DNA of 64,000 nucleotides from Selaginella moellendorffii (taxonomy: Eukaryota; Plantae; Lycopodiophyta), in assembly GCF_000143415.4 (NCBI RefSeq), contig NW_003314305.1:191325-255324 (forward strand). The letters run 5' to 3'. The position numbers were made by a program, and so were the translations under genes. The notes beneath the pieces were generated by a model. The model saw only the letters and a list, made by a program, of their open reading frames with translations. It made no database searches and was not told the origin of the DNA. Shown here piece after piece: positions 39,331-64,000 of this stretch (positions are counted from its first letter, which is position 1; each line of letters begins with the position of its first letter).

Positions 39331-39419
39331 ATGCTCAACGTGGCACAAAGATGCCTCTGCCACGTGTTACGTTTAATTAATCAATAATAATACTGTTACG
39401 GTAGTTAAGTGGAATACTT

Positions 39420-44400: not shown

Positions 44401-44835
44401 CTGAATAATGTGTGGTCCCGATCTGGCGCTCCTGTCACGTGGGCTTGTCTCGGCCGTCGGTATCCAGACGGTAGATCTCCCGGGCATTATTTTAGTAGTA
44501 AGTATTATTTTAGTCAATTAAGCTTGTTTAGTGTTTGTGTTGGCAGCGAGAAACATACCATTACTGTGGCCATGACAGTGTGTGCTCGAAATTTCACACA
44601 CGCCCTAAACAACAATATAGAATGAGATTTGATTATTTTTCTTTTGGGCACCCACAAGCCACATGGTGATAAGGTTGAATAAGGAGGTGACAGCGTGATC
44701 TGATATGAACCTTTGGAGTTTTTGATATGGCGAGTGCTGGTTATCCAACCTACACTGCGCATTGATGTTGGTGGCGGGGGAATATTATCAATCAATATTT
44801 AGCAAATTGGATCCTGTCTTTTGGAAAGTTTAATG

Positions 44836-44905
44836 TGATTTTCTGGTTGGGCATGAGCAATGGCCACGGGATGGGTTCAAGAGGTGAAAGAGAATCTAAT
44901 GCCAA
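44836..44905 (-). pseudogene. Truncated 5' stub of the PPR gene at the array boundary
   Basis: Identical to 54310-54379, but the PPR body is absent to the left. Confidence 0.85.
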
Positions 44906-45354
44906 AGTTGCAATGCTGATTCAGGCCTATTTAGAGCCATCCAGGCCAAATAGATTACAATTCTTATATTCTTTGTCCGCTCGGGGAGAAAGAAAAAAAA
45001 GCATATGTTGATCTGCAAACCAATGCTTTTGATTTCATTGGATTTTTAATCACAGCCCAGTGCGTTCTTAATGGCACAGAGGAGACAGGCCTGGAAGCAG
45101 CTGGGGGCGATTCTCCAGGACCAGAAAGCCTGACTAATCAAAGAGCCACGTAAATAGAAGCTCAAAGAACTATACGAAACAATGGAAAACATGGAAAGAC
45201 GATGGAAACAAGCTATGCGATGGAACAATGGAAAACAATGGAAAAAACACAACATCCAAGAACATCTTCGACGATTCATGACCCTCGACAACCTGGAGAG
45301 TCTACATGAGAACTCAGGAAACGACGGAAACTTCATTGCAAACTTACGGATTGC

Positions 45355-47275
45355 CTAGAACTGGGGACGGCCCTGCTGAAACCGGGAGGTGAAACTTTGC
45401 CCTCCGCATTCTAGCTCGACCTTCATGCCATCCCGAAAGCTGAGAACATACTCGGAGCACAAGTTTATGAGCTCGTGGCCGAGGACGAAATCGTGGCGAG
45501 CCAGATTCATGACCGCGAAATCCAGGCATCCCTTGAACCCGCCCTCGAGCTCAAACTCGAGGTCCGCCACTTTGCGATTGCTGGGCTGCGCGGTGCTCCC
45601 CACAAGCAGGTTGACGCTAAACGGACGGCACAGCGAAGTCGTCAGCCCGAGGCGGTTGACGGCGTTGACCGACACGAAGCTGTCCGAGTTCTGGCTGAGC
45701 ATGAAGGACGCCGGGCGGCCGTTGACCGTGCCCCGGAGCCAGCGGCCATAGTCGTCGTCGCCCATGAAGGACACCAGGCACGTCTTGGCCAGCGGCGCCG
45801 CCGTGAGCTCGGCTACCAAGTCTTGAGCCTCGTTCAAGCTGCCTGGCTGCTTGCCCGCCACGAACTCGGCCACCTCAGCGTTGGGCACCGACTGGAGAAA
45901 GCTGCATACCTCGAGAGGAAGAAGCTCCATTTCTTGCCCTAGGACCGTTTCAGGAGAAGAATATACCCGTGATTTTAAAACCCTGCTTGGGGCCCTGGTG
46001 CTCATCTCAAGATGTAGAGCCGCATCCAAATTCTCAGGGCTGTGCTTGAGATATCCCGGCACTACACTCTTTTCCAGGTCCTCAAGAACGTTAGCAGGGA
46101 ATATTCGCACCTTGTTCTTTTCGGCCCAAACCATGGTACGTGTACATTTGTTTTCCTTGATGATCTTTTTCATAGTTTCTGAGCCTTGTAGCTTGATCTT
46201 ATTCACCACCTGAACAACAATGACAGAAAAATACGACATCGGTCTCTAGAAGGTTTGCTATCAGTTTTCAGATCTTCTTACTAGGTGATTGTCATGGGCT
46301 ATGTTCCTCGAGGCGAGGGCACAGACGCAATGCCAGTGCATGACATCGGCGAGCACCTGGTACTCTTTCTCGGGAGGACGTGGTAGAGGGAGCGGAGGTT
46401 CAGGCCCTCTCCTAGAGTCTCACACCTGGATACGTCTTGGAGCTTGCAGCTTGATGCCGTCGCGAACGTGATAGTTGATGTGGATGAGCTGGCCAGCCTA
46501 AGGTCACAGTTCCAAAACACCATCAGGATATTATTCCATTGATGGTTTCATAGGTGCTTTTATTGATGAGGCTGTTCCCAAAGCTTATATAGCTTCGTCT
46601 TCTAAAATGATAGCCGAGCTTGGGAAACGTGAAAACCATGAGAATCATAACTTCTGGACGATGTCCAAGCCCTTTCATCACCTGCAAGTTAACAGAACTG
46701 AAAAGAGAAGCGAGCAGAAACTCACGGCGTTTACTCCTCAAACTGGGGACGACCCTGGTGGAACGGCGAGGTAAACTTCTGCCCACCGCCTAATCCAAAG
46801 TCGACCTTGATGATACCATCATCGTCCTTGTAAATCGCCTCGGAGCACACCTTCAAGAGCTGGTGCCCGAGGACGAAATCGTGGTGAATCAGATCCATAA
46901 CTGAAAAATCCATGCTGAAACTTGAGTTTGCGAACTTTGCGATTGTGGGGCGGAGAGGGGTTCCCGCCCAGGAACTTGACGCAAAACGGGCGGCACAGCG
47001 TCGTGGTCGGCCCCAGCCTATTGACCGCATTGACCGACACGAAGCTGTCCGAGTTCTGGCTCAGCATGAAGGATACCGGGCGGCCGTTGACCAGTTGCCG
47101 TAGTCCTCGTTGCCCATGTAGACACCCAGCACCGCTTGGCCAGCGGCGCCGCCGTGGCCACCACGGCTTGGGCCTCGCTCACGCTGCCTGGCTGCTTGGC
47201 CGCCACGAACTCGGCCACCTCGGTGTTTGACACCGACTGGAGATAGCTGTGTACCTCGAGAGAAAGAAGCTCCAT
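45355..47275 (-). CDS. Gag-CTD-like + retropepsin-like (pseudo)protease locus, copy 1; upstream module frameshifted, downstream module open
   Basis: FLQSVPNAEVAEFVAGKQPGSLNEAQDL (gypsy Gag-like) then LRGTVNGRPASFMLSQNSDSFVSVNAVNRLGL...DFVLGHELI (retropepsin pattern without D(S/T)G). Confidence 0.65.
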
Positions 47276-47987
47276 TTTTTCCTAACTTTTCTTGCCCTAC
47301 TGGGAGAAGAATATACTCAACAGAAAGTTTGCGCTATAGATGCCAAGCCAGGAGCATAAACAAAGAGCGAAAGAGTGAGGAGTGAAGCTTTCTTTCAGTA
47401 AAAGCAATACACTTTCCTGGTTGTTCTTGGACAAGGAAGTCCAGCTTAAATTAACAAATCTCACATGTACAAAACTATTAACAGTATATAATTTTTGGAA
47501 CCTGTATCTAAAATATACTAAAATATTTTGGAATATTCTACTATCTAAAAATGTTATTCATTTTGTATCTATATAAACTTTCTTAACCACTTACTAGCAT
47601 ATTCTAAGTTAATCTGATGTTTATAATTTATAACACAAGATTAATTTTATTACAAGCTATCAATATGATTAATAAATAATAAGCACTCAAATTATTTAAT
47701 TTTTAATTTTTGAGAAGAGAACCAATCATTTATGACATCTCCCACAATGATATCGCTCCATTCGGTACAAACACGTCCCATACAAGAACTTCCCACGTCC
47801 TCCAGTTTATCTGAGTCACTAAGAAATAAGAAACAAGAAAAGAATTGCTTTCTACCTGATTAGCAGAATGGTGTTGCTTGACGTCTTCAATCCCTTTGTT
47901 GGTAGCATGAAGGCAGAGCAAAAACAGCAGAGCAAATTTATTGATATTTCATCTTTATTTCATACATAACTATTTTCATATCGATCT

Positions 47988-48491
47988 TTAGTAAGGTTTC
48001 TGGCCTCCAACGTTGCCTGGTGGATCATAGTTGCAACTCACAATGTACGCATTCGCACCATTGCATTTCACTCGAGCGCATCCCACTCGCACCGAGTTCC
48101 TCCACACAACCTGAGTGTAGTGCCCGCACACCTTGCCCGGAGCACAAGTGTTTGATGCGTAATTGTAATCAGCCTTTTCCTTCACCCATTCTTTGACTGC
48201 GTCCGTGGCTGGAGGCGGCGCCAAGCCATCGCTCCCCCTCCACATATACAAGTTCTCGCCATACGGCCCGCTAGAGTGGACCATTTGACAGCTCGCCTGG
48301 AGAGTCGAGGCCCAGTTTTGCGCATACGAGGCAACTTGCTCGTTCCAAACCAGCGGAGGAACATTAACAGCAGATCTCGCGGAGTTGTGTGCGTCGACAA
48401 GATCACTCTCCGTGCTTGCAAGACCTGCGTGGAGAAATCCAGTGCCATAGATCACAAGAACCATTAGAGTTGCACGAAGAACTCCCCCCAT
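47988..48491 (-). CDS. PR1: Pathogenesis-related protein 1 (CAP/SCP), secreted, copy 1
   Basis: Signal peptide; HNSAR, HSSGPYGENL, CGHYTQVVWRNSVRVGC, CNYDPPGN..GQKPY; ATG at 48491. Confidence 0.96.
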   Translation of the reverse strand: MGGVLRATLMVLVIYGTGFLHAGLASTESDLVDAHNSARSAVNVPPLVWNEQVASYAQNWASTLQASCQMVHSSGPYGENLYMWRGSDGLAPPPATDAVKEWVKEKADYNYASNTCAPGKVCGHYTQVVWRNSVRVGCARVKCNGANAYIVSCNYDPPGNVGGQKPY

Positions 48492-48885
48492 AGCGATCAA
48501 ACTAGAACGCGGATTGCACAACTAAAAAGTATAGGAGCACGAAAACTTACTGTGGGAGACCATCCTCTTATAAAGCAGAGCGTAGGCATGGGGATCTCCC
48601 TTTGGATACGGCAAATACATTTCTTCTTAATGTTAGTCTTGCTTGCTCGCACGAGATTTTCCACGTCGTTATGCTCGTTTTTTTCTTGATCAATGACAAG
48701 AGATGGGTCAGTGACTTGACTTAACCGGCATGACCTTCCAGAATTCCACAAGATGGTTGCTGGGAACTTAAATAGTTCTATAGATCATAGATCATCAAGA
48801 ATAAAGATGACCTACAAATTAACGAATATACCAAGAAAAGTATGCAAGTATATGATTCTCTTCGATTAGGTCATAGATAGAGAAC
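48492..48885. promoter_or_regulatory. Divergent promoter PR1/vWA with W-box cores
   Basis: ggtcagtgacttgactt at ~48706-48722 (TTGACT and TGACC on the opposite strand), TGACC at ~48731 and ~48808, TATA-like TTTATAA on the minus strand at ~48568-48574. Repeated at 57961-58354. Confidence 0.55.
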
Positions 48886-50582
48886 ATGGCGGCAGGGTTT
48901 GAGAATTCCGAGGTAAGCAGCACGCTCCAGGAAGACGAGATCGTCCATCTTAGCGAGGAGCTAGGCTGGCTAGTGATTGGCGAGCAGCCGGAGCTCAAGA
49001 TCATCGGCGAGGTCGACAAGATCAAGGCCAGGGGAGAAGAAGAAGAAGAAGAAGAGCGATGCTATACAGCGCTCGTCCATCTCAAAGCTCCCAAAAGCGA
49101 TAGCTCCGATGATGCTCGCGCCCCGGTCGATCTGGTCACAGTGCTGGACGTGAGCGGCAGCATGCGCGGCCAGAAGCTGGAGCTCGTCAAGACCGCCATG
49201 GAGTTTGTGATCCGGAATTTGCGACAGCAGGACCGCCTCGCGATCGTCTCCTTCTCGGACGAGCCCAAAGTCCATCTCGGTCTCAAGAGGATGACTTACG
49301 ACGGTCGAGAGGCGGCACTCAGTGCAGTGGAGAAGCTGCGGACCCTGGGAGGGACCGAGATCCGTCCGGGGCTAAAGGCTGGATTCGATCTTCTCTCGCG
49401 GCGCAGGAACAGGAACCCGGTGTCGAGCATCATGCTTCTCTCGGACGGGATGGACAATGCGATCACGTTCAAGCGATGCAAAGTTCTTCCAGTGGATTCC
49501 TACCTCGAGGACTGCAGTGAGCGGGTTCCAGTGCACACTTTCGGATTTGGAAGTGACCATGATCCCGAGGCCATGCTCAGCATCGCCGAGGCCACAGGCG
49601 GCAGCTTTTGCTACGTGCAAGAGGAGTCCACCGTCCAGCACGCGTTTGCTCAGTGCATTGGCGGGCTGCTTAGCGTGGTGGCACAGGAAGTGGAGGTCTG
49701 CATCGAGGCGAGTGGCGGAGCGAAGATCAGGAGTGTGGAAGCCACCGCCGGAACGACGGCCATGGATGGCGATCGAGCTGCGACAGTGAAGCTTGGATCC
49801 TTGTACGCGGAAGAGGAGAGAGATATCCTGGTGGAGCTCTTGCTGCCTAGCTCTGACTCGAGCTCTTCGTCGATGGAACTTCTCAAAGTTGGGGGGAGCT
49901 TTCGAGACCCCGGGCAGTCGAACAAGACCCAGCAGTTTGCAACTTCGAGCTTGGTAATCCAGGAGCTCAAAGCTGGCGAAGAAGAGGAGGCGGTAAGGAT
50001 TGAGGTGGACAGGCAGAAGAACCGTGTGAGTGCCTCGAAGGCGATGGCTGCCGCTCGTAAGCTGGGGTCTGGCAGCTTGGCATCGGCAAAGCAAGCGCTG
50101 GTGGACGTGAAGGAAAAGATTGAGAGCTCCCGAGCGTTTGGAGCTGGCGATGGCTTGTCCAAGAGATTGGTGAGAGAACTCGACGAGCTGATCCAGTGCA
50201 TGAAGGAGGATTATTACCAGTTTGGGGGGCATGCCATGCTGCTTGCCAAGGGGAATTCTCACTGCAACCAGCGAGCTTCGTACCAGCCAACGTACCAGCC
50301 AACATGTAAGACATTTTGGACAGCTCTTTTGTGTTCTAACTCTTGTGAACTCTCTTCTCTCTCTTTGAATCAGCCCGTTTTGCCGGTTGCAGCAGCAACA
50401 ACGTACCTCTCTGTGGCAGCACCAACCACAGCAGCAGCAACGTAGCGTTCGCAAACTTTAGCAAATTCGATTTCCACGCTAGAAGTTCCTTGGCACAAGA
50501 CGATGAGCCAGAGACATCCTATGAAACGTCGGCGATGGTAGATATGCTGGACAAGTCTAAGAAGTTCAAGAGTAATAGATAA
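48886..50582 (+). CDS. vWA-Vwaint protein (RING-less WAV3-family-like), copy 1; intron 50306-50373
   Basis: RAPVDLVTVLDVSGSM (MIDAS), GGTEI, IMLLSDG, PVHTFGFGSDHD, AFAQCIGGLLSVVAQE, SHCNQRAS. The spliced last exon restores SYETSAMVDMLDKS. Confidence 0.9.
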
Positions 50583-51027
50583 ATCTAGATTTTTCTATTT
50601 GATGCATGTTGCGGTGTGTTGGTGGAAACATGGAGAAGTTAAGCAAAAGAGCAGAATCACAGAACTTACAGATCACTGGAAACCTGGTGAAAGCCCTTGC
50701 AGCTGTGGCATCCTAGTTGATGTTGCAAGCATAAACAGTAAGATAAAGGGAGATAACCAGCTTTATACTTGAGAATGGCATCACCATCTTTAAGCAAGCA
50801 ACCTCTCCATTTTGTGATCAAACTAAAGATGGAGAGAGCTGGATTTTGTGAGCTTTTGATAAGCTGATTCATTGCAGCGTTTTCTCGAAATCAAATACAT
50901 GGCGATGGCGTTCCAGGACAAAACGTAATAGTTATAATAGATACCCTTGTTCAGTAAAGGTATAAAGTTCGAAACCTTCGCCCACACGGCAAGTAGCTAG
51001 CTACGTAAATAGCTCTCTTCGATTACA

Positions 51028-52739
51028 ATGGCGGCAGGATTTGAGAAATCCGAGGTAAGCAGCATGGATCTCACGCTCCAGGAAGACGAGATCGTCCATC
51101 TTAGCGAGGAGCTAGGCTGGCTAGTGATTGGCGAGCAGCCGGAGCTCAAGATCATCGGCGAGGTCGACAAGATCAAGGCCAGGGGAGAAGAAGAAGAAGA
51201 GCGATGCTATACAGCGCTCGTCCATCTCAAAGCTCCTAAAAGCGATAGCTCCGATGATGCTCGCGCCCCGGTCGATCTGGTCACAGTGCTGGACGTGAGC
51301 GGCAGCATGCGCGGCCAGAAGCTGGAGCTCGTCAAGACCGCCATGGAGTTTGTGATCCGGAATTTGCGACAGCAGGACCGCCTCGCGATCGTCTCCTTCT
51401 CGGACGAGCCCAAAGTCCATCTCGGTCTCAAGAGGATGACTCACGACGGTCGAGCCGCGGCACTCAGTGCAGTGGAGAAGCTCCGGAGCTTGGGAGGAAC
51501 AGAGATCCGTCCAGGGCTAAAGGCTGGATTCGATCTTCTTTCGCGGCGCAAGAATAGGAACCCGGTGTCGAGCATCATGCTTCTCTCGGACGGGATGGAC
51601 AATGCGATCACGTTCAAGCGATGCAAAGTTCTTCCAGTGGATTCCTACCTCGAGGACTGCAGTGAGCGGGTTCCAGTGCACACTTTCGGATTTGGAAGTG
51701 ACCATGATCCCGAGGCCATGCTCAGCATCGCCGAGGCCACAGGCGGCAGCTTTTGCTACGTGCAAGAGGAGTCCACCGTCCAGCACGCGTTTGCTCAGTG
51801 CATTGGCGGGCTGCTTAGCGTGGTGGCACAGGAAGTGGAGGTCTTCATCGAGGCGAGTGGCGGAGCGAAGATCAAGAGTGTGGAGGCCACCGCCGGGATG
51901 ACAGCCATGGATGGAGATCGAGCTGCGACGGTGAAGCTTGGATCCCTGTATGCGGAAGAGGAGAGAGATATCCTGGTGGAGCTCTTGCTGCCTAGCTCCG
52001 ACTCGAGCTCTTTGTCGATGGAACTTCTCAAAGTTGAGGGAAGCTTTCAAGACCCTGGGCATTCGAACAAGACCCAACTGCTTGCAACTTCGAGCTTGGT
52101 GATCCAGGAGCTCAAAGCTGGCGAAGAGGAGGAGGCGACAAAGATCGAGGTGGACAGGCAGAAGAACCGTGTGAGTGCCTCGAAGGCGATGGCTGCCGCT
52201 CGTAAGCTGGGGTCTGGCAGCTTGGCGTCGGCAAAGCAAGTGCTGGTGGACGTGAAACAAAAGATAGAGAGCTCCCGAGCGTTTGGAGCTGGCGATGGCT
52301 TGTCCAGGAGATTGGTGAGAGAACTCGACGAGCTGATCCAGTGCATGAAGCGGGATTATTACCACTCCGAGGGACATGCTGTGCTGCTTGCCAAGGGGAA
52401 TTCTCACTGCAACCAGCGAGCTTCGTACCAGTCGAGAGGTAAGACATTTTGGACAGCTCTTTTGTGTTCTAACTCTTGTGAATTTTGTTACTTAAATCAG
52501 CACGGAAGCGCCCCGCCTTTTTCGAAGGTGGCAGAGGTGGCAGAGGGGGCAGAGGTGCTGGTGCTAAACCACGGAGCAATGCAGCTCCTTGTCTTGGTGC
52601 TAGTGCTAAAAGAATGAGCACTGGTGGGGTTCTTTCAGAAAGCCTGGTACAAGAGACATCCTCAGATGATGAGTCGTACCGAACGTCGGCGATGGTAGAT
52701 ATGCTGGACAAATCCAAGAAATTCAAGAGTAAGAGATAG
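51028..52739 (+). CDS. vWA-Vwaint protein copy 2; intron 52439-52500
   Basis: As copy 1; last exon ARKRPAFFEGGRGGRGGRG...SYRTSAMVDMLDKSKKFKSKR*. Confidence 0.9.
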
Positions 52740-53308
52740 ATCTAGATTTCAAGTTGACAAAGCTCGAACTTGACAAGCATAAGTGTGTTCCGAACTCCAA
52801 AGTAAGCGTTTCTGGCCCAACACGATCCAGATCCAGCCATTCCCCATCCAATGGTCAGGTCAACGACAAGAAATAGTCAACGACCCATACCTAAGCGTCC
52901 GACGTGAAAGCACTGGGCCTTCTTATGGAGTTTGCATTGCTATCGTTTTCTGGACTTTTCTCCTCAATCAGTTTGCAGAGCCAGATGCTCGAAGCCCTGA
53001 TGCTGCACTCCACAGTCAAGATGATGGGAGCTCCCATCAATGCTGATTAAACTGGAGGGTTTTCAAAGCTCTACTTCAGAAATCTGGTGTGGACAATCAG
53101 CCCATACAATTACCTTTGCTATGTTCCAGAACAAGAAGCTTATTGTCTATCAATCTAAGGAGGACATGTAACTTCTTGCTCCTTCTGTCACATGCATTTT
53201 TAACAAAAGTAGTCTTCTTCAGAGAAACAAATAGATCTTGTTCAATTCAGAGAGGAGAGGTAGTAATTGTGGATGAAACCGACTGTATTAAATATTTATA
53301 CACATTGT

Positions 53309-54328
53309 CTAGTTTGTTATGCTAGCAAGAAGCATGTAAGGACTTGCTCTAAGGAGCTTTTGATCCTGTTGTAAGTAGAAGATGTTACTGGCTACTCGTG
53401 CCCCACATTCCACATCGTTCTGTAGTCTACAGGCACTCAGCAAACATCCCCATGAAACGTCATCGGGAGTGAATGGCATGCTGTGAATCAACTCTTCTGC
53501 CTCGTGAATCCTTCCCATTCTCGCCAGAATGTCTATCATGCATCGGAAGTTTTCCACTGACGGTCTAAAGTCGTGATCAAAAGCCATGGATCTAAACCAC
53601 GACAGCGCCTCCTGGAGCATTCCTTCGTGGCTAAACGCAAACAAAATCCCTGTGACTGTCGTCTCCTCGCAGTTGACACCTTCAACGCACATCCTGAACG
53701 ATAGCTCCAACGCAGTTTGGATGTAACCTTTTTGAGCATAAGCAACGATCATAGCATTCCAGGAAACCGTGTTTTTCTCATGCATTTGGTGGAAGATTTC
53801 TTTTGCTTCGAAAAGATGGCCATTATGGGCATGCGTTACGATCAGAGCATTCAAGACTGATGTTTCTTGAGAAGCGTTCCAAGGGATTAAATCTCTGGCT
53901 TGAGTCACGTTTCCATTCTCTCCACAAGCGATTACCATGCTTGTCCATGACAGATTATTGCTCGCCGGGATTTTCTCGAGCAAAGCTTTTGCGTGATCTA
54001 GATATCCAGCAGTGGCTAAAGCTGAAATTGCAGCGTTCCAACACATAAGGTCACGCATGGGGCACCTCTCAAAGTAAACTTTCGCTTCTTCCAACTTCCT
54101 CTTGGACACGAGCACACACACCATTGAAGTCCAGCTTATCACGCTCCACCCCGGCATTTTCCAGAATGTCGTTGTGGCCATGCAAAGATTACCAGAATCC
54201 GCGTTTGCTTGAAGTATAGTCGTCCACGAAGCCAAGTTTCTCTGAGGCATGTCGCCAAAAAGCTCGCAAACTTTCTCAGTATTAAGATTCTCGCGGTACA
54301 TCTGAAGCATGATTTTCTGGTTGGGCAT
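53309..54328 (-). CDS. PLS-class pentatricopeptide repeat protein with E domain (no DYW)
   Basis: Repeats MPQRNLASWT, MPGWSVISWTSM, NTVSWNAMIVAYAQKG, FRCMIDILARMGRIHEAEELIHSMPFTPDDVSWGCLLSACR, ASPYMLLASI. First ATG at 54328. Confidence 0.88.
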   Translation of the reverse strand: MPNQKIMLQMYRENLNTEKVCELFGDMPQRNLASWTTILQANADSGNLCMATTTFWKMPGWSVISWTSMVCVLVSKRKLEEAKVYFERCPMRDLMCWNAAISALATAGYLDHAKALLEKIPASNNLSWTSMVIACGENGNVTQARDLIPWNASQETSVLNALIVTHAHNGHLFEAKEIFHQMHEKNTVSWNAMIVAYAQKGYIQTALELSFRMCVEGVNCEETTVTGILFAFSHEGMLQEALSWFRSMAFDHDFRPSVENFRCMIDILARMGRIHEAEELIHSMPFTPDDVSWGCLLSACRLQNDVECGARVASNIFYLQQDQKLLRASPYMLLASITN

Positions 54329-54831
54329 GAGCAATGGCCACGGGATGGGTTCAAGAGGTGAAAGAGAATCTAATGCCAAAGTTGCAATGCTGATTCAGGC
54401 CTATTTAGAGCCATCCAGGCCAAATAGATTACAATTCTTATATTCTTTGTCCGCTCGGGGAGAAAGAAAAAAAAAGCATATGTTGATCTGCAAACCAATG
54501 CTTTTGATTTCATTGGATTTTTAATCACAGCCCAGTGCGTTCTTAATGGCACAGAGGAGACAGGCCTGGAAGCAGCTGGGGGCGATTCTCCAGGACCAGA
54601 AAGCGTGACTAATCAAAGAGCCACGTAAAGAGAAACTCAGAGAACTATACGAAACAATGGAAAACATGGAAAGACGATGGAAACAAGCTCTGCGATGAAA
54701 CAATGGAAAACAATGGAAAAAACACAACATCCAAGAACATCTTCTCGACGATTCATGACCCTCGACAACCTGGAGAGTCTACATGAGAACTCAGAAAACG
54801 ACGGAAACTTCATTGTAAACTTACGGATAAC

Positions 54832-56752
54832 CTAAAACTGGGGACGGCCCTGCTGAAACCGGGAGGTGAAACTTTGCCCTCCGCATTCTAGCTCGACCTT
54901 CATGCCATCCCGAAAGCTGAGAACATACTCGGAGCACAAGTTTATGAGCTCGTGGCCGAGGACGAAATCGTGGCGAGCCAGATTCATGACCGCGAAATCC
55001 AGGCATCCCTTGAACCCGCCCTCGAGCTCAAACTCGAGGTCCGCCACTTTGCGATTGCTGGGCTGCGCGGTGCTCCCCACAAGCAGGTTGACGCTAAACG
55101 GACGGCACAGCGAAGTCGTCAGCCCGAGGCGGTTGACGGCGTTGACCGACACGAAGCTGTCCGAGTTCTGGCTGAGCATGAAGGACGCCGGGCGGCCGTT
55201 GACCGTGCCCCGGAGCCAGCGGCCATAGTCGTCGTCGCCCATGAAGGACACCAGGCACGTCTTGGCCAGCGGCGCCGCCGTGAGCTCGGCTACCAAGTCT
55301 TGAGCCTCGTTCAAGCTGCCTGGCTGCTTGCCCGCCACGAACTCGGCCACCTCAGCGTTGGGTACCGACTGGAGAAAGCTGCATACCTCGAGAGGAAGAA
55401 GCTCCATTTCTTGCCCTAGGACCGTTTCAGGAGAAGAATATACCCGTGATTTTAAAACCCTGCTTGGGGCCCTGGTGCTCATCTCAAGATGTAGAGCCGC
55501 ATCCAAATTCTCAGGGCTGTGCTTGAGATATCCCGGCACTACACTCTTTTCCAGGTCCTCAAGAACGTTAGCAGGGAATATTCGCACCTTGTTCTTTTCG
55601 GCCCAAACCATGGTACGTGTACATTTGTTTTCCTTGATGATCTTTTTCATAGTTTCTGAGCCTTGTAGCTTGATCTTATTCACCACCTGAACAACAATGA
55701 CAGACAAATACGACATCGGTCTCTAGAAGGTTTGCTATCAGTTTTCAGATCTTCTTACTAGGTGATTGTCATGGGCTATGTTCCTCGAGGCGAGGGCACA
55801 GACGCAATGCCAGTGCATGACATCGGCGAGCACCTGGTACTCTTTCTCGGGAGGACGTGGTAGAGGGAGCGGAGGTTCAGGCCCTCTCCTAGAGTCTCAC
55901 ACCTGGATACGTCTTGGAGCTTGCAGCTTGATGCCGTCGCGAACGTGATAGTTGATGTGGATGAGCTGGCCAGCCTAAGGTCACAGTTCCAAAACACCAT
56001 CAGGATATTATTCCATTGATGGTTTCATAGGTGCTTTTATTGATGAGGCTGTTCCCAAAGCTTATATAGCTTCGTCTTCTAAAATGATAGCCGAGCTTGG
56101 GAAACGTGAAAACCATGAGAATCATAACTTCTGGACGATGTCCAAGCCCTTTCATCACCTGCAAGTTAACAGAACTGAAAAGAGAAGCGAGCAGAAACTC
56201 ACGGCGTTTACTCCTCAAACTGGGGACGACCCTGGCGGAACGGCGAGGTAAACTTCTGCCCACCGCCTAATCCAAAGTCGACCTTGATGATACCATCATC
56301 GTCCTTGTAAATCGCCTCGGAGCACACCTTCAAGAGCTGGTGCCCGAGGACGAAATCGTGGTGAATCAGATCCATAACTGAAAAATCCATGCTGAAACTT
56401 GAGTTTGCGAACTTTGCGATTGTGGGGCGGAGAGGGGTTCCCGCCCAGGAACTTGACGCAAAACGGGCGGCACAGCGTCCTGGTCGGCCCCAGCCTATTG
56501 ACCGCATTGACCGACACGAAGCTGTCCGAGTTCTGGCTCAGCATGAAGGATACCGGGCGGCCGTTGACCAGTTGCCGTAGTCCTCGTTGCCCATGTAGAC
56601 ACCCAGCACCGCTTGGCCAGCGGCGCCGCCGTGGCCACCACGGCTTGGGCCTCGCTCACGCTGCCTGGCTGCTTGGCCGCCACGAACTCAGCCACCTCGG
56701 TGTTTGACACCGACTGGAGATAGCTGTGTACCTCGAGAGAAAGAAGCTCCAT
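54832..56752 (-). CDS. Gag-CTD-like + retropepsin-like (pseudo)protease locus, copy 2
   Basis: Near-identical to copy 1, including the same frameshifts in the upstream module. Confidence 0.65.
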
Positions 56753-57456
56753 TTTTTCCTAACTTTTCTTGCCCTACTGGGAGAAGAATATACTTAACAG
56801 AAAGTTTGCGCTAGGAGCATAAACAAAGAGCGAAGGAGTGAGGAGTGAAGCTTTCTTTCAGTAAAAGCAATACACTTTCCTGGTTGTTCTTGGACAAGGA
56901 AGTCCAGCTTAAATTAACAAATCTCACATGTACAAAATTATTAACAGTATATAATTTTTGGAACCTGTATCTAAAATATACTAAAATATTCTGGTTTATT
57001 TTACTATCTAAAGATTGTTATTCATTTTGTATCTATAATTTATAAACTTTCTTAACCACTTACTAGTATATTCTAAGTTAATCTGATGTTTATAATTTAT
57101 AACACAAGATTAATTTTATTACAAGTTATCAATGTGATTAATAAATAAAAAGCACTCAAATTATTTAATTTCTAATTTTTGAGAAGATAACCAATCGTTT
57201 ATGACATCTCCCACAATGATATCGCTCCATTCGGTACAAACACGTCCCATACAAGAACTTCCCACGTCCTCCAGTTTATCTGAGTCACTAAGAAATAAGA
57301 AACAAGAAAAGAATTGCTTTCTACCTGATTAGCAGAATGGTGTTGCTTGACGTCTTCAGTCCCTTCGTTGGTAGCATAAAGGCAGAGCAAAAACAGCAGA
57401 GCAAATTTATTGATATTTCATCTTTATTTCATACATAACTATTTTCATATCGATCT

Positions 57457-57960
57457 TTAGTAAGGCTTCTGGCCTCCAACGTTGCCTGGTGGATCATAGT
57501 TGCAACTCACAATGTACGCATTCGCACCATTGCATTTCACTCGAGCGCATCCCACTCGCACCGAGTTCCTCCACACAACCTGAGTGTAGTGCCCGCACAC
57601 CTTGCCCGGAGCACAAGTGTTTGATGCGTAATTGTAATCAGCCTTTTCCTTCACCCATTCTTTGACTGCGTCCGTGGCTGGAGGCGCCACCAAGCCATCG
57701 CTCCCCCTCCACATATACAAGTTCTCGCCATACGGCCCTTTAGAGTGGACCATTTGACAGCTCGCCTGGAGAGTCGAGGCCCAGTTTTGCGCATACGAGG
57801 CAACTTGCGTGCTCCAAACCAGCGGAGGAACATTAACAGCAGATCTCGCGGAGTTGTGTGCGTCGACAAGATCACTCTCCGTGCTTGCAAGACCTGCGTG
57901 GAGAAATCCAGTGCCATAGATCACAAGAACCATTAGAGTTGCACGAAGAACTCCCCCCAT
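57457..57960 (-). CDS. PR1: PR-1 copy 2
   Basis: As copy 1, with five amino-acid differences. Confidence 0.96.
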   Translation of the reverse strand: MGGVLRATLMVLVIYGTGFLHAGLASTESDLVDAHNSARSAVNVPPLVWSTQVASYAQNWASTLQASCQMVHSKGPYGENLYMWRGSDGLVAPPATDAVKEWVKEKADYNYASNTCAPGKVCGHYTQVVWRNSVRVGCARVKCNGANAYIVSCNYDPPGNVGGQKPY

Positions 57961-58354
57961 AGCGATCAAACTAGAACGCGGATTGCACAACTCAAAAGTA
58001 TAGGAGCACGAAAACTTACTGTGGGAGACCATCCTCTTATAAAGCAGAGCGTAGGCATGGGGATCTCCCTTTGGATACGGCAAATACATTTCTTCTTAAT
58101 GTTAGTCTTGCTTGCTCGCACGAGATTTTCCACGTCGTTATGCTCGTTTTTTTCTTGATCAATGACAAGAGATGGGTCAGTGACTTGACTTAACCGGCAT
58201 GACCTTCCAGAATTCCACAAGATGGTTGCTGGGAACTTAAATAGTTCTATAGATCATAGATCATCAAGAATAAAGATGACCTACAAATTAACGAATATAC
58301 CAAGAAAAGTATGCAAGTATATGATTCTCTTCGATTAGGTCATAGATAGAGAAC

Positions 58355-60069
58355 ATGGCGGCAGGGTTTGAGAATTCCGAGGTAAGCAGCACGCTCCAGG
58401 AAGACGAGATCGTCCATCTTAGCGAGGAGCTAGGCTGGCTAGTGATTGGCGAGCAGCCGGAGCTCAAGATCATCGGCGAGGTCGACAAGATCAAGGCCAG
58501 GGGAGAAGAAGAAGAAGAAAAAGAGCGATGCTATACAGCGCTCGTCCATCTCAAAGCTCCCAAAGACGATAGCTTGGCCGCCGCCGATGCTCGCGCCCCG
58601 GTCGATCTGGTCACAGTGCTGGACGTGAGCGGCAGCATGCGCGGCCAGAAGCTGGAGCTCGTCAAGACCGCCATGGAGTTTGTGATCCGGAATTTGCGAC
58701 AGCAGGACCGCCTCGCGATCGTCTCCTTCTCGGACGAGCCCAAAGTCCATCTCGGTCTCAAGAGGATGACTCACGACGGTCGAGCCGCGGCACTCAGTGC
58801 AGTGGAGAAGCTCCGGAGCTTGGGAGGAACAGAGATCCGTCCAGGGCTAAAGGCTGGATTCGATCTTCTTTCGCGGCGCAAGAATAGGAACCCGGTGTCG
58901 AGCATCATGCTTCTCTCGGACGGGATGGACAATGCGATCACGTTCAAGCGATGCAAAGTTCTTCCAGTGGATTCCTACCTCGAGGACTGCAGTGAGCGGG
59001 TTCCAGTGCACACTTTCGGATTTGGAAGTGACCATGATCCCGAGGCCATGCTGAGTATCGCGGAGGCCACAGGCGGAAGCTTTTGCTACGTGCAAGAGGA
59101 GTCCACCGTCCAGCACGCGTTTGCTCAGTGCATTGGCGGGCTGCTTAGCGTGGTGGCACAGGAAGTGGAGGTCTTCATCGAGGCGAGTGGCGGAGCGAAG
59201 ATCAAGAGTGTGGAGGCCACCGCCGGGATGACAGCCATGGATGGAGATCGAGCTGCGACGGTGAAGCTTGGATCCCTGTATGCGGAAGAGGAGAGAGATA
59301 TCCTGGTGGAGCTCTTGCTGCCTAGCTCCGACTCGAGCTCTTTGTCGATGGAACTTCTCAAAGTTGAGGGAAGCTTTCAAGACCCTGGGCAGTCGAACAA
59401 GACCCAACTGCTTGCAACTTCGAGCTTGGTGATCCAGGAGCTCAAAGCTGGCGAAGAAGAGGAGGCGACAAAGATCGAGGTGGACAGGCAGAAGAACCGT
59501 GTGAGTGCCTCGAAGGCGATGGCTGCCGCTCGTAAGCTGGGGTCTGGCAGCTTGGCGTCGGCAAAGCAAGTGCTGGTGGACGTGAAACAAAAGATAGAGA
59601 GCTCCCGAGCGTTTGGAGCTGGCGATGGCTTGTCCAGGAGATTGGTGAGAGAACTCGACGAGCTGATCCAGTGCATGAAGCGGGATTATTACCACTCCGA
59701 GGGACATGCTGTGCTGCTTGCCAAGGGGAATTCTCACTGCAACCAGCGAGCTTCGTACCAGTCGAGAGGTAAGACATTTTGGACAGCTCTTTTGTGTTCT
59801 AACTCTTGTGAATTTTGTTACTTAAATCAGCACGGAAGCGCCCCGCTTTTTTCGAAGGTGGCAGAGGTGGCAGAGGGGGCAGAGGTGCTGGTGCTAAACC
59901 ACGGAGCAATGCAGCTCCTTGTCTTGGTGCTAGTGCTAAAAGAATGAGCACTGGTGGGGTTCTTTCAGAAAGCCTGGTACAAGAGACATCCTCAGATGAT
60001 GAGTCGTACCGAACGTCGGCGATGGTAGATATGCTGGACAAATCCAAGAAATTCAAGAGTAAGAGATAG
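58355..60069 (+). CDS. vWA-Vwaint protein copy 3; intron 59769-59830
   Basis: 5' flank and N-terminus like copy 1; body and 3' end like copy 2. Confidence 0.9.
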
Positions 60070-60633
60070 ATCTAGATTTCAAGTTGACAAAGCTCGAACT
60101 TGACAAGCATAAGTGTGTTCTGAACTCCAAAGCAAGCGTTTCTGGCCCAACACGATCCAGATCCAGCCATTCCCCATCCAATGGTCAGGTCAACGACAAG
60201 AAATAGTCAACGACCCATACTTAAGCGCCCGACGTGAAAGCACTGGACCTTCTTATGGAGTTTGCATTGCTATCGTTTTCTGGACTTTTCTCCTCAATCA
60301 GTTTGCAGAGCCAGATGCTCGAAGCCCTGATGCTGCACTCCACAGTCAAGATGATGGGAGCTCCCATCAATGCTGATTAAACTGGAGGGTTTTCAAAGCT
60401 CTACTTCAGAAATCTGGTGTGGACAATCAGCCCATACAATTACCTTTGCTATGTTCCAGAACGAGAAGCTTATTGTCTATCAATCTAAGGAGGACATGTA
60501 ACTTCTTGCTCCTTCTGTCACATGCATTTTTAACAAAAGTAGTCTTCTTCAGAGAAACAAATAGATCTTGTTCAATTCAGAGAGGAGAGGTAGTAATTGT
60601 GGATGAAACCTATTAAATATTTATACACATTGT

Positions 60634-61644
60634 CTAGTTTGTTATGCTAGCAAGAAGCATGTAAGGACTTGCTCTAAGGAGCTTTTGATCCTGTTGTAAG
60701 TAGAAGATGTTACTGGCTACTCGTGTCCCACATTCCACATCGTTCTGTAGTCTACAGGCACTCAGCAAACTTCCCCATGAAACGTCATCGGGAGTGAATG
60801 GCATGCTGTGAATCAACTCTTCTGCCTCGTGAATCCTTCCCATTCTCGCCAGAATGTCTACCATGCATCGGAAGTTTTCCACTGACGGTCTAAAGTCGTG
60901 ATCAAAAGCCATGGATCTAAACCACGACAGCGCCTCCTGGAGCATTCCTTCGTGGCTAAACGCAAACAAAATCCCTGTGACTGTCGTCTCCTCGCAGCTG
61001 ACACCTTCAAGGCACATCCTGAACGATAGCTCCAACGCAGTTTGGATGTAACCTTTTTGAGCATAAGCAACGATCATAGCATTCCAGGAAACCGTGTTTT
61101 TCTCATGCATTTGGTGGAAGATTTCTTTTGCTTCGAAAAGATGGCCATTATGGGCATGCGTTACGATCAGAGCATTCAAGACTGATGTTTCTTGAGAAGC
61201 GTTCCAAGGGATTAAATCTCTGGCTTGAGTCACGTTTCCATTCTCTCCACAAGCGATTACCATGCTTGTCCATGACAGATTATTGCTCGCCGGGATTTTC
61301 TCGAGCAAGTGATCTAGATATCCAGCAGTGGCTAAAGCTGAAATTGCAGCGTTCCAACACATAAGGTCACGCATGGGGCACCTCTCAAAGTAAACTTTCG
61401 CTTCTTCCAACTTCCTCTTGGACACGAGCACACACACCATTGAAGTCCAGCTTATCACGCTCCACCCCGGCATTTTCCAGAATGTCGTTGTGGCCATGCA
61501 AAGATTACCAGAATCCGCGTTTGCTTGAAGTATAGTCGTCCACGAAGCCAAGTTTCTCTGAGGCATGTCGCCAAAAAGCTCGCAAACTTTCTCAGTATTA
61601 AGATTCTCGCGGTACATCTGAAGCATGATTTTCTGGTTGGGCAT
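60634..61644 (-). CDS. PLS-E PPR protein copy 2 (9-bp in-frame deletion, AKA)
   Basis: Near-identical to 53309-54328. Confidence 0.88.
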   Translation of the reverse strand: MPNQKIMLQMYRENLNTEKVCELFGDMPQRNLASWTTILQANADSGNLCMATTTFWKMPGWSVISWTSMVCVLVSKRKLEEAKVYFERCPMRDLMCWNAAISALATAGYLDHLLEKIPASNNLSWTSMVIACGENGNVTQARDLIPWNASQETSVLNALIVTHAHNGHLFEAKEIFHQMHEKNTVSWNAMIVAYAQKGYIQTALELSFRMCLEGVSCEETTVTGILFAFSHEGMLQEALSWFRSMAFDHDFRPSVENFRCMVDILARMGRIHEAEELIHSMPFTPDDVSWGSLLSACRLQNDVECGTRVASNIFYLQQDQKLLRASPYMLLASITN

Positions 61645-64000
61645 GAGCAATGGCCACGGGATGGGTTCAAGAGGTGAAAGAGAATCTAATGCCAAAGTTG
61701 CAATGCTGATTCAGGCCTATTTAGAGCCATCCAGGCCAAATAGATTACAATTCTTATATTCTTTGTCCGCTCGGGGAGAAAGAAAAAAAAAGCATATGTT
61801 GATCTGCAAACCAATGCTTTTGATTTCATTGGATTTTTAATCACAGCCCAGTGCGTTCTTAATGGCACAGAGGAGACAGGCCTGGAAGCAGCTGGGGGCG
61901 ATTCTCCAGGACCAGAAAGCGTGACTAATCAAAGAGCCACGTAAAGAGAAACTCAGAGAACTATACGAAACAATGGAAAACATGGAAAGACGATGGAAAC
62001 AAGCTCTGCGATGAAACAATGGAAAACAATGGAAAAAACACAACATCCAAGAACATCTTCTCGACGATTCATGACCCTCGACAACCTGGAGAGTCTACAT
62101 GAGAACTCAGAAAACGACGGAAACTTCATTGTAAACTTACGGATAACCTAAAACTGGGGACGGCCCTGCTGAAACCGGGAGGTGAAACTTTGCCCTCCGC
62201 ATTCTAGCTCGACCTTCATGCCATCCCGAAAGCTGAGAACATACTCGGAGCACAAGTTTATGAGCTCGTGGCCGAGGACGAAATCGTGGCGAGCCAGATT
62301 CATGACCGCGAAATCCAGGCATCCCTTGAACCCGCCCTCGAGCTCAAACTCGAGGTCCGCCACTTTGCGATTGCTGGGCTGCGCGGTGCTCCCCACAAGC
62401 AGGTTGACGCTAAACGGACGGCACAGCGAAGTCGTCAGCCCGAGGCGGTTGACGGCGTTGACCGACACGAAGCTGTCCGAGTTCTGGCTGAGCATGAAGG
62501 ACGCCGGGCGGCCGTTGACCGTGCCCCGGAGCCAGCGGCCATAGTCGTCGTCGCCCATGAAGGACACCAGGCACGTCTTGGCCAGCGGCGCCGCCGTGAG
62601 CTCGGCTACCAAGTCCTGAGCCTCGTTCAAGCTGCCTGGCTGCTTGCCCGCCACGAACTCGGCCACCTCAGCGTTGGGCACCGACTGGAGAAAGCTGCAT
62701 ACCTCGAGAGGAAGAAGCTCCATTTCTTGCCCTAGGACCGTTTCAGGAGAAGAATATACCCGTGATTTTAAAACCCTGCATTGAGCGTTTGGTGGTGCTC
62801 ACCTTCAAGATGTAGAGCCGCATCCAAATCCTCAGGGCTGTGCTTGAGATATCCCGGCACTACACTCTTTTCCAGATCTTCAAGAACGTTAGCAGGGAAT
62901 ATTCGCACCTTGTTCTTTTCGGCCCCAAACCCATGCATTATTCAGACATGGTACGTGTACATTTGTTTTCCTTGATGATCTTTTTGATAGTTTCTGAGCC
63001 TTGTAGCTTGATCTTATTCACCACCTGAACAACGATGACAAGTGTGGTTACAGCGAGGAATCAAAAACCTTGTTTCGACTTCCTCAAGTTCGCAATGTGC
63101 CAGGCCGAACAGAACCTGCTTGTTGGCCGCCCTGACGTCCAGAGCCTGCAAAAGAGTGCGAGAGGAGTCGCTATGTAAAAGGAGCTCGACAAATACGATA
63201 TCGGTCTCTAGAAGGTTTGCTATCAGTTTTCAGATTTTCTTACTAGGTGATTGTCATGGGCTATTTTCCTGGAGGCGAGGGCACAGACGCAATGCCAGTG
63301 CATGACATCGGCGAGCACCTGGTACTCTTTCTCGAGAGGACGTGGTAGAGGGAGCGGAGGTTCAGGTCCTCTCCTAGAAGTCTCATACCTGGATACGTCT
63401 TGGAGCTTGCAGCTTGATGCCAGAGTTGATGTGCATGAGCTGGCCAGCCTAAGGTCACAGTTCCAAAACACCATCAGGATACTTCTGGACGATGTCCAAG
63501 CCCTTTCATCACCTGCAAGTTAACAGAACTGAAAAGAGAAGCGAGCAGAAACTCACGCCGTTTACTCCTCAAACTGGAGACGCCCCTGGTGGAACGGCGA
63601 GGTAAACTTCTGCCCACCACCTAATCCAAAGTCGACCTTGATGATACCATCATCGTCCTTGTAAATCGCCTCGGAGCACACCTTCAAGAGCTGGTGCCCG
63701 AGGACGAAATCGTGGTGAATCAGATCCATGACTGAAAAATCCATGCAGCCCTTGTACCCGCCCTCAAGCTGAAACTTGAGTTTGCGAACTTTGCGATTGT
63801 GGGGCGGAGAGGGGTTCCAGCCCAGGAACTTGACGCAAAACGGGCGGCATAGCGTCGTGGTCGGCCCCAGCCTATTGACCGCATTGACCGACACGAAGCT
63901 GTCCGAGTTCTGGCTCAGCATGAAGGATACCGGGCGGCCGTTGACCGTGCCCCGGAGCCAGTTGCCGTAGTCCTCGTTGCCCATGTAGCACACCCAGCAC
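61626..64000. repeat. Tandem unit 3 (partial, more divergent after ~62780)
   Basis: Near-identical to unit 2 up to ~62780, then indels and SNPs. Confidence 0.9.
62148..64000 (-). CDS. Gag-CTD-like + retropepsin-like (pseudo)protease locus, copy 3; upstream module intact, 5' end off-window
   Basis: ORF 63562-63993 CYMGNEDYGNWLRGTVNGRPVSFMLSQNSDSFVS...EGGYKGCMDFSVMDLIHHDFVLGHQ is uninterrupted; downstream module is ORF 62148-62723. Confidence 0.7.

What the first reader, a model, noticed from the sequence alone, without database searches (positions are those of the whole stretch)
45355..47275. Possibly domesticated Ty3/gypsy Gag-protease gene with a systematically dead active site (D(S/T)G replaced by SQN)
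Seen: in all six module copies (two per unit) the retropepsin-like pattern LRGTVNGRPxSFML-SQNSDSFVS..AVNRLG...DFVLG has SQN where xLxD(S/T)GAxxxFIS carries the catalytic Asp. Where visible, it is preceded by a Gag-capsid-CTD-like stretch (FLQSV.N.EVAEFVA.KQPGS..EAQ). No RT, RNaseH, integrase or LTRs are nearby, and spliceosomal-type donors/acceptors surround the modules. The two diverged modules share the same SQNSDSF replacement, so the catalytic loss predates their split. Inferred: a co-opted pseudoprotease (dimerisation scaffold, substrate trap or effector decoy), analogous to domesticated Gag/protease genes such as ASPRV1, PEG10 and Arc but catalytically inactive.
Basis: partly seen in the sequence, partly recalled or inferred. 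Interest (0 to 1): 0.78.

Follow-up and report, generated by a model that had tools for sequence, protein, structure and literature searches.

The report
Dead retrotransposon protease gene remnants, Selaginella
A spikemoss (Selaginella moellendorffii) gene cluster carries repeated copies of a small gene descended from a jumping-gene coat-protein/protease, whose protease fold is kept but whose catalytic aspartate is gone; one of the two versions is intact and was kept by selection, and the other is broken in every copy.

Summary
The motif is real. SQNSDSF occurs six times on the minus strand, in the place of the retropepsin D-S/T-G loop. The six copies are not six witnesses. They are two tandem paralogs (A and B, about 1.4 kb apart), each triplicated by a recent segmental duplication that also carries PR-1/CAP, vWA and PPR genes.

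The window is Selaginella moellendorffii scaffold GL377609.1. The finding's span is the ab initio model SELMODRAFT_444449, which fuses broken B1 to A1.

Homology to Ty3/gypsy Gag-protease holds, but only through intermediates:
- Pfam does not match A or B directly.
- A paralog on another scaffold (P0020/P0023) has Ty3_capsid, Retrotrans_gag and RVP_2, and also has Ser at the Asp position.
- AlphaFold gives a retropepsin fold (pLDDT 80), and its closest solved structures are DDI1 and HIV proteases.
- No LTR, RT or integrase lies within about 10 kb of either locus.

dN/dS over the protease-like domain is 0.42-0.48, with bootstrap intervals below 1. A is a 191-codon ORF, intact in all four copies seen. 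Every B copy is frame-broken, by two independent sets of deletions. No relative was found outside this species except a multi-domain dead retropepsin from an unidentified organism.

Verdict: a real, lineage-restricted, partly decaying Gag/pseudoprotease remnant family. Domestication is plausible but unproven.

The parts
45355..45930 (-). Module A1. A 191-codon ORF plus stop (start MELLPLEV). Residues 1-50 are a helical Gag-capsid C-terminal stub, and residues 55-191 are the retropepsin-fold domain without the catalytic Asp. The mechanical ORF runs on to 46239 (294 aa), but that extension is not shared by A3 or the other haplotype.
45688..45696 (-). Codons Ser79-Gln80-Asn81 of A1, which occupy the D-S/T-G active-site loop of retropepsins. 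The Ser codon is AGC.
46731..47275 (-). Module B1, a paralog of A (about 67% aa identity). It is a pseudogene: the ATG is in place, but deletions of 1, 13 and 23 bp (near 47122, 47093 and 46916) split it over three frames.
54832..55407 (-). Module A2. Its protein is identical to A1 (2 nt differences).
56208..56752 (-). Module B2, with the same three deletions as B1.
62148..62723 (-). Module A3, an intact 191-aa ORF. This was the query for the searches and for the structure model.
63562..64000 (-). Module B3, which runs off the window end. Its body is in one frame, but locus L001 shows a 19-bp deletion after codon 7, beyond the window, that puts the ATG out of frame. It is 99% identical to the single B copy of the other haplotype.
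45000..64000 (.). The tandem segmental duplication (units of 9477 and 7316 bp) that carries the A-B pair together with host genes: PR-1/CAP (47988-48521, 57457-58089), vWA (48886-50445, 51028-52617, 58355-59947) and PPR (53309-54379, 60634-61695). The other haplotype has a single unit.

Best explanation
A and B are host-resident remnants of a Ty3/gypsy Gag-protease reading frame in Selaginella moellendorffii.

Shown:
- An ancestor like the paralog P0023 (Gag capsid, then a linker, then a protease-like domain, with no zinc knuckle, no pol and no LTRs) had already lost the catalytic Asp, which became Ser.
- A 5'-truncated derivative kept only the last capsid helices plus the pseudoprotease domain. 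It duplicated in tandem to give A and B.
- The A-B pair was then triplicated in this haplotype, together with neighbouring PR-1, vWA and PPR genes.
- The protease-like domain keeps the retropepsin fold.
- It evolved under purifying selection after the Asp was lost and after the in-situ A/B duplication (omega about 0.4).
- B has since been frame-broken in both of its lineages, while A remains an intact 191-codon ORF.

Inferred:
- A cannot hydrolyse peptides, because a retropepsin active site needs one Asp from each subunit of a dimer.
- If A is expressed, it most likely acts as a non-catalytic binding or dimerising module through the retained beta-barrel and cleft.
- My preferred specific mechanism is trans-dominant interference with Gag/protease of related gypsy elements. 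This would parallel Gag-derived restriction factors such as Ty1 p22.
For: Identity and origin:
- The exhaustive protein search found only 5 cluster representatives. P0020 scores 5e-27, P0021 5.7e-9 and canonical P0022 1.4e-4.
- Pfam on P0020/P0023 gives Ty3_capsid at 34-38 bits (cut-off 29.1), Retrotrans_gag at 24.0-24.2 bits (cut-off 24.1; P0020 just above, P0023 just below) and RVP_2 at 21.0-21.2 bits (cut-off 20.3).

Dead site: Ser sits at the Asp column in A, B, P0020 and P0023, with the same AGC codon.

Fold: the AF2 model has pLDDT 80.4 and pTM 0.73. Foldseek against PDB puts DDI1 RVP domains, HIV/XMRV proteases and rickettsial APRc at the top (E about 2e-6, target TM about 0.7). The viral library gives DDI1-type, caulimovirus and retroviral proteases.

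Not a mobile element now:
- There is no pol and there are no LTR-like repeats at either locus.
- Both loci are allelic on both haplotypes.

Selection:
- dN/dS over the protease-like domain is 0.42 for A-B (bootstrap 0.26-0.70), 0.44 for A-P0023 (0.24-0.68) and 0.48 for B-P0023.
- dN is lowest (0.09) around the former active-site loop, and dS is even along the ORF.
- A-B similarity is confined to the ORF plus about 40 bp.

Other points:
- A is intact in A1-A3 and in the other haplotype.
- The stub aligns with the end of the P0023 capsid domain.
- Ty1 p22 is a precedent for a Gag-derived trans-dominant inhibitor (PMC4599808).
Against: - Neither A nor B matches any Pfam family directly, even at E<=10.
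- No ortholog was found in any other species among 1.84 billion cluster representatives or in three word searches, so conservation across species is unshown.
- All four B copies are broken.
- One allele of the paralog (P0020) carries a roughly 356-bp insertion inside the ORF.
- The A and B branches carry equal numbers of assignable amino-acid changes, 11 and 12, so A is not visibly more constrained than B.
- Allelic A comparisons show 3 non-synonymous changes among 4-6 differences, which is uninformative.
- No transcript or protein evidence could be consulted.
- Loss of the D-S/T-G 'fireman's grip' may weaken dimerisation. Dimer formation was not modelled.
- The restriction-factor mechanism is pure inference.
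Confidence: 0.6

Rival explanations
1. Purely neutral relic. A, B and P0020/P0023 are decaying fragments of an old gypsy element with no host function. The omega below 1 would be a leftover from the time the lineage was still mobile, or a short-sequence artefact, and A is intact only because its copies are very young.
For: - B is broken in all copies by independent lesions.
- The P0020 allele has an insertion.
- No orthologs were found outside the species.
- Amino-acid change is equal on the A and B branches.
- A copies differ by only 2-6 nt, so their intactness says little.
- Another decayed retropepsin fragment lies at 1393-1668.
Against: - A and B are adjacent, same-strand tandem copies, so their divergence (dS about 0.5) built up in place and not in a transposing lineage. 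Even so, omega is 0.42, and no bootstrap replicate reached 1.
- At that divergence a 191-codon ORF, and a 329-codon ORF in P0023, remain open.
- The flanks have diverged beyond alignment while the ORF has not.
- The sequence still specifies a confidently predicted fold.
Confidence: 0.3
2. Internal region of a non-autonomous LTR retrotransposon (Gag plus dead protease) that is still mobilised in trans by autonomous gypsy elements.
For: The Gag-PR architecture of P0023. Purifying selection could act on Gag for packaging.
Against: - No LTR-like direct repeats lie within +-10 kb of either locus.
- Only two loci turned up in the protein collections.
- Copy increase here is by segmental duplication together with host genes.
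- A has lost almost all of Gag.
Confidence: 0.05
3. Still an active protease that uses a different acidic residue, for example the conserved Asp four residues further on (NSDSF in A and B, SSDNF in P0020/P0023).
For: That Asp is conserved in A, B and P0020/P0023.
Against: - It aligns with the His/Gly position of canonical DSGSTHSF, not with the catalytic loop.
- From general knowledge, the +4 position in HIV protease (Asp29) binds substrate and is not catalytic.
- The Gly of the triad is also lost.
Confidence: 0.03

Closest known systems
Ty3/gypsy (Metaviridae) Gag-protease region (Pfam Ty3_capsid/Retrotrans_gag + RVP_2/gag-asp_proteas)
   Same: This is the evident ancestor. Paralog P0023 matches Ty3_capsid and RVP_2 above their cut-offs and Retrotrans_gag at it (24.0 vs 24.1 bits), in the canonical order. 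A keeps the fold and the second motif (D-x-V-L-G).
   Different: There is no D-S/T-G, no CCHC zinc knuckle, no RT, RNase H or integrase, and no LTRs. A keeps only about 35 residues of Gag. A and B themselves fall below Pfam detection.
Mammalian domesticated Gag-protease genes PEG10 and RTL1/PEG11
   Same: They are Ty3/gypsy-derived, have lost their LTRs, and are host-resident Gag-plus-protease reading frames.
   Different: PEG10 and RTL1 retain the DSG protease motif (PMC3406341) and are conserved across mammals. The Selaginella family has Ser in place of Asp, is seen in one species only, and is partly pseudogenised.
ASPRV1/SASPase
   Same: It is a stand-alone retropepsin-like domain gene of retroelement origin.
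   Different: SASPase is an active protease that processes profilaggrin (PMC3406341). Module A lacks the catalytic residue.
DDI1 retroviral-protease-like (RVP) domain
   Same: These are the closest solved structures to the model (3s8i, 4rgh, 4z2z, 2i1a).
   Different: The similarity is in fold only (9-17% identity). DDI1 has a D-S/T-G-A site and UBL/UBA domains, and A has none of these. A is not a member.
Gag-derived trans-dominant restriction factors (Ty1 p22/p18)
   Same: This is a 'works-like' analogy only: a truncated retroelement structural protein that could poison assembly or maturation of related elements (PMC4599808).
   Different: p22 is encoded by the element itself and is capsid-derived. 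Here the retained part is mainly the protease fold, and no interaction has been shown.
P0021/P0024 (Logan SRR33208242/41, organism unknown)
   Same: It is the nearest relative outside Selaginella in the exhaustive search (E 5.7e-9). Its retropepsin-like domains also have Ser at the Asp position.
   Different: It has three and a half tandem domains in one ORF and no Gag. Its Ser codons are TCN rather than AGC, so the loss may be independent.

Membership tests
Retropepsin fold / clan AA (Pfam RVP_2, gag-asp_proteas, Asp_protease_2) | Retropepsin beta-barrel fold | tested here: met
   The AF2 model has pLDDT 80.4. Foldseek top hits are DDI1 RVP domains and HIV, XMRV and APRc proteases, with E about 2e-6 and target TM about 0.7. 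Caveat: the 12-row alignment includes three canonical retropepsins.
Retropepsin fold / clan AA (Pfam RVP_2, gag-asp_proteas, Asp_protease_2) | Sequence match to the family profile at gathering score | tested here: not met
   A and B get no hit even at E<=10. It is met only marginally by paralogs P0020/P0023 (RVP_2 21.0-21.2 bits against a cut-off of 20.3). Homology of A rests on the chain A-P0020 (5e-27) and A-P0021 (5.7e-9).
Retropepsin fold / clan AA (Pfam RVP_2, gag-asp_proteas, Asp_protease_2) | Catalytic Asp-Ser/Thr-Gly triad | tested here: not met
   Ser-Gln-(gap)/Asn sits in that column in A and B, and Ser-Asn-Ser in P0020/P0023.
Retropepsin fold / clan AA (Pfam RVP_2, gag-asp_proteas, Asp_protease_2) | Second conserved block (D-x-[IV]-L-G followed by a helix) | tested here: met
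   D147, L150 and G151 are invariant across dead and canonical sequences. The model has helix 152-157.
Retropepsin fold / clan AA (Pfam RVP_2, gag-asp_proteas, Asp_protease_2) | Homodimer forming a shared cleft | not testable with these tools
   Only monomer prediction was available.
Ty3/gypsy Gag capsid | Match to Ty3_capsid / Retrotrans_gag | tested here: inconclusive
   Paralog P0023 matches Ty3_capsid at 37.7 bits (cut-off 29.1) and Retrotrans_gag at 24.0 bits (cut-off 24.1). A and B keep only a stub, with no Pfam hit. The stub aligns with P0023 119-151 at a shuffle p of about 0.01. The AF2 model of the P0023 Gag part was too uncertain to use.
Ty3/gypsy Gag capsid | CCHC zinc knuckle after the capsid domain | tested here: not met
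   No C-x2-C-x4-H-x4-C is present in P0023, P0020, A or B, read directly from the sequences.
LTR retrotransposon (autonomous or non-autonomous) | Flanking long terminal repeats | tested here: not met
   The only direct repeats found are the A/B modules themselves and the segmental units.
LTR retrotransposon (autonomous or non-autonomous) | RT / RNase H / integrase next to Gag-PR | tested here: not met
   The called genes within +-10 kb at the three loci carry only CAP, VWA, PPR, PFK, squalene-hopene cyclase, thioredoxin and similar families. tblastn found no more Gag in the window.
Domesticated transposable-element gene | Purifying selection after immobilisation | tested here: met
   Omega is 0.42-0.48, with bootstrap upper bounds of 0.68-0.76, including between the in-situ tandem copies A and B. 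It is weakened by the broken B copies.
Domesticated transposable-element gene | Orthologs at syntenic positions in other species | tested here: not met
   No relative from another identified species was found. Only the two haplotypes of one plant are syntenic. Genomes of other Selaginella species could not be searched at the DNA level.
Domesticated transposable-element gene | Expression as a host gene | not testable with these tools
   No transcript data were available. The exact 191-aa ORF is not in the protein collection.
DDI1 family | UBL (and UBA) domains flanking an active D-[ST]-G-A RVP domain | tested here: not met
   No such Pfam domains were found and no Asp is present. The similarity is in fold only.

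The most novel reading that the evidence does not exclude
A lycophyte-specific domesticated Gag/pseudoprotease family. The catalytically dead retropepsin domain would have been kept by selection as a trans-dominant inhibitor: it would form inactive heterodimers with, or trap, the Gag-protease of gypsy retrotransposons. Alternatively it could be a decoy within the co-amplified PR-1/vWA defence-type gene cluster. Either way it would be a plant counterpart of Gag-derived restriction factors, built from the protease instead of the capsid.
Probability: 0.12. Interest if true: 0.7.

Novelty: new variant of a known kind. Interest (0 to 1): 0.35.

Why it matters
Retroelement-derived host genes are well documented in mammals (PEG10, RTL1, ASPRV1), and those cited keep their protease motif. 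A plant lineage that kept the retropepsin fold under purifying selection after losing the catalytic Asp would be a natural retropepsin pseudoenzyme. It would also be a candidate protein-level brake on gypsy elements. The practical lesson is more modest. The annotated gene SELMODRAFT_444449 is a fusion of a pseudogene with a 191-codon ORF, and the apparent six-fold recurrence reflects a haplotype-specific segmental triplication of a PR-1/vWA/PPR cluster.

Tried and rejected
- Direct Pfam scans of A, B3 and the B1 pieces (each piece scanned apart) gave nothing relevant, even at E<=10.
- phmmer against PDB sequences gave nothing.
- The three word-index searches (A; the P0020 protease region; a profile of protease-like domains) returned only self hits plus two canonical metagenomic retropepsins.
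- The fetch of an annotated region does not hold this scaffold.
- The AF2 model of full-length P0023 was too uncertain over the Gag part (pLDDT about 50). I ran no fold search on it, so the capsid assignment rests on Pfam.
- The organism behind SRR33208241/2 could not be identified from papers or from the contig's other ORFs.
- I looked for more Gag or pol pieces in the window by tblastn and Pfam, and found none apart from a decayed retropepsin fragment at 1393-1668.
- I considered the antisense 155-aa ORF (45475-45942, +) as the real gene and rejected it, because all homology is on the minus strand.
- I considered gene conversion as the reason A and B share the motif and rejected it. dS is even along the ORF, and the unlinked paralog shares the Ser.
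- I considered the downstream Asp as a shifted catalytic residue and rejected it on the alignment.
- I assembled and searched no joined (spliced) model of my own. The database models P0002, P0019 and P0020 were used only by id. I built no read-through or repaired version of B.

Full report
**What is there.** The window is Selaginella moellendorffii scaffold GL377609.1, assembly GCA_000143415.2. The finding's span, 45355-47275 on the minus strand, is exactly the annotated hypothetical gene SELMODRAFT_444449 (P0002, 421 aa).

A six-frame motif scan finds SQNSDSF six times, all on the minus strand. The copies form two types:
- Module A lies at 45355-45930, 54832-55407 and 62148-62723.
- Module B lies at 46731-47275, 56208-56752 and 63562 to beyond the window end.

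A and B lie about 1.4 kb apart in the same orientation. The A-B pair is repeated at 9477 and 7316 bp as part of a segmental duplication. That duplication also carries PR-1/CAP, vWA and PPR genes. The three A copies differ by 2 nt and encode the same protein. The 'six copies' are therefore two paralogs, each triplicated very recently.

**The other haplotype.** The other haplotype of the same plant is scaffold GL377567.1 (locus L004). It has a single B-A pair between the same neighbours. Its flank matches window 35363-45992 at 98.6%, and its B matches B3 at 99.0%.

**State of the copies.** A is a 191-codon ORF starting MELLPLEV, intact in A1-A3 and in the other haplotype, with 3 amino-acid differences in the latter. 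The 294-aa mechanical ORF of A1/A2 is not shared by A3 or by the other haplotype, so the 191-codon ORF is the conserved unit.

B is broken everywhere:
- B1 and B2 share deletions of 1, 13 and 23 bp that spread the module over three frames.
- B3 and the other haplotype's B share a different lesion, a 19-bp deletion after codon 7 that leaves the ATG out of frame.

The annotated 421-aa protein reads B1 out of frame after the first deletion and then 'splices' its way into A1. I take it to be an ab initio artefact. I built no spliced or repaired model of my own. Searches used single ORFs by reference, the B pieces were scanned apart, and database models were used only by id.

**Is it a retropepsin?** Direct scans say nothing: there is no relevant Pfam hit for A or B even at E<=10 and no PDB sequence hit. 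The word-index search found only the protein itself.

Because the protein stayed open, I ran the exhaustive search. Among 1.84 billion cluster representatives only five score below 1e-3:

| Hit | What it is | E-value |
|---|---|---|
| P0019 | the other haplotype's B+A model | 2e-193 |
| P0001 | the 294-aa A ORF itself | 1e-122 |
| P0020 | a paralog on scaffold GL377569.1 | 5e-27 |
| P0021 | a 574-aa protein from an unidentified Logan assembly | 5.7e-9 |
| P0022 | a canonical DSGS retropepsin | 1.4e-4 |

P0020 and its allele P0023 (329 aa, a single uninterrupted ORF) match Ty3_capsid (34-38 bits, cut-off 29.1), Retrotrans_gag (24.0-24.2, cut-off 24.1) and RVP_2 (21.0-21.2, cut-off 20.3). P0021 matches RVP_2 at 1.5e-22. 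In alignments, the Asp of the canonical L[IV]DSGS aligns with Ser in A, B, P0020/P0023 and all three P0021 domains. The second retropepsin block, D-x-V-L-G, is invariant.

AlphaFold2 on A with a 12-row alignment gives pLDDT 80.4 and pTM 0.73: three N-terminal helices followed by a beta-barrel. Foldseek places it with DDI1 RVP domains, HIV and XMRV proteases and rickettsial APRc (E about 2e-6, target TM about 0.7), and with DDI1-type, caulimovirus and retroviral proteases in the viral library. The retropepsin fold and the missing catalytic Asp are therefore both confirmed.

**The Gag stub.** The N-terminal 50 residues of A align colinearly with residues 119-151 of P0023, the end of its Ty3_capsid match. 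The local score is 39, against 25.4 +/- 4.5 for shuffles (p about 0.01). No other Gag piece is in the window. A and B are thus 5'-truncated derivatives of a P0023-like Gag-pseudoprotease frame, and they also lack its roughly 40-residue linker. None of the proteins has a CCHC knuckle, read directly from the sequences.

**Mobile element or host gene?**
- Neither locus has pol domains among the called genes within +-10 kb.
- Neither locus has LTR-like direct repeats.
- Both loci sit at the same place on both haplotypes.
- Copy number here grew by segmental duplication together with host genes.

Over the protease-like domain, dN/dS is 0.42 for A-B (bootstrap 0.26-0.70), 0.44 for A-P0023 (0.24-0.68) and 0.48 for B-P0023. 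All three share Ser with the same AGC codon, so this divergence post-dates the loss of the Asp. A and B are adjacent tandem copies, so their divergence arose in place. dS is even along the ORF (0.32-0.64), which argues against gene conversion. dN is lowest (0.09) around the former active-site loop.

Several facts count against a strong claim of domestication:
- Every B copy is broken.
- The P0020 allele carries a roughly 356-bp insertion in the ORF, which the annotators treated as an intron.
- The A and B branches carry equal numbers of assignable amino-acid changes, 11 and 12.
- Allelic comparisons are too small to be informative.
- No relative was found in another identified species.
- I had no expression data.

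**How it most likely works.** That the site is dead rests on established retropepsin chemistry: one Asp from each subunit forms the active site. From that I infer that A cannot be a protease. If A is made, it is a non-catalytic retropepsin-fold protein that binds partners through the barrel or cleft, or by dimerisation.

The most specific hypothesis I would test first is trans-dominant interference with the Gag/protease of related gypsy elements, by analogy with the Gag-derived Ty1 p22 inhibitor (PMC4599808).

My estimates for each layer of the claim are:

| Claim | Probability |
|---|---|
| Retroelement origin with a dead site | about 0.95 |
| A is, or until recently was, a selected host gene | about 0.5 |
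| The restriction or decoy mechanism | about 0.1 |

**Comparison and novelty.** PEG10 and RTL1 are Ty3/gypsy Gag-protease genes that retain DSG, and SASPase is an active retropepsin-like protease (PMC3406341). This family differs in four ways: it lacks the Asp, it keeps little or none of Gag in A and B, it is restricted to one species so far, and it is partly pseudogenised. A full-text search for 'retropepsin' together with 'pseudoprotease' found only two unrelated papers.

I rate it a new variant of a known kind, of modest interest. It is a real and tidy case, but lineage-restricted, without functional evidence, and partly decaying.

Noticed in passing
window 1393-1668 (+): A decayed canonical retropepsin fragment (..LVDIGSSFSFI.., a stop, then ..LILSMDWL). 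It still has the Asp and is unrelated in position to the A/B modules. Pfam found no RT or integrase ORFs nearby; the only Pfam hit nearby was Kelch repeats in the ORF at 5683-6054.
   Followed up: partly
window 45000-64000 vs L004 (GL377567.1): Structural difference between haplotypes. This haplotype has three tandem units of a PR-1/CAP, vWA (with a weak, sub-threshold Vwaint hit), PPR and A-B cluster, and the other haplotype has one. Unit 1 has two vWA genes (48886-50445 and 51028-52617).
   Followed up: partly
L003 906-2630; L005 1604-3379 (Logan SRR33208242/41): A 574-591-aa ORF from an unidentified organism, with three and a half tandem retropepsin-like domains. All have Ser (TCN codons) in place of the catalytic Asp. 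It is the closest relative of module A outside Selaginella.
   Followed up: partly
L002 10055-10410 vs L006 10001-10990: The P0020 allele of the Gag-pseudoprotease paralog carries a roughly 356-bp insertion inside the ORF. The insertion shares 64-67-nt inverted repeats with sequence about 400-600 bp upstream, which looks MITE-like. The P0023 allele is uninterrupted. The locus lies between inverted duplicated squalene-hopene cyclase genes.
   Followed up: partly
window 31935-32699 (-): An uninterrupted 254-aa ORF for a 20S proteasome alpha subunit, with no intron in the coding region. It is named 'alpha 3' by the sources of its cluster.
   Followed up: no
window 45475-45942, 54952-55419, 62268-62735 (+): A 155-aa antisense ORF runs through each A copy. 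This is typical of GC-rich coding sequence, and no homology supports it.
   Followed up: no
window 8001-12000: A markedly AT-rich stretch (27-31% GC), against 38-59% elsewhere in the window.
   Followed up: no
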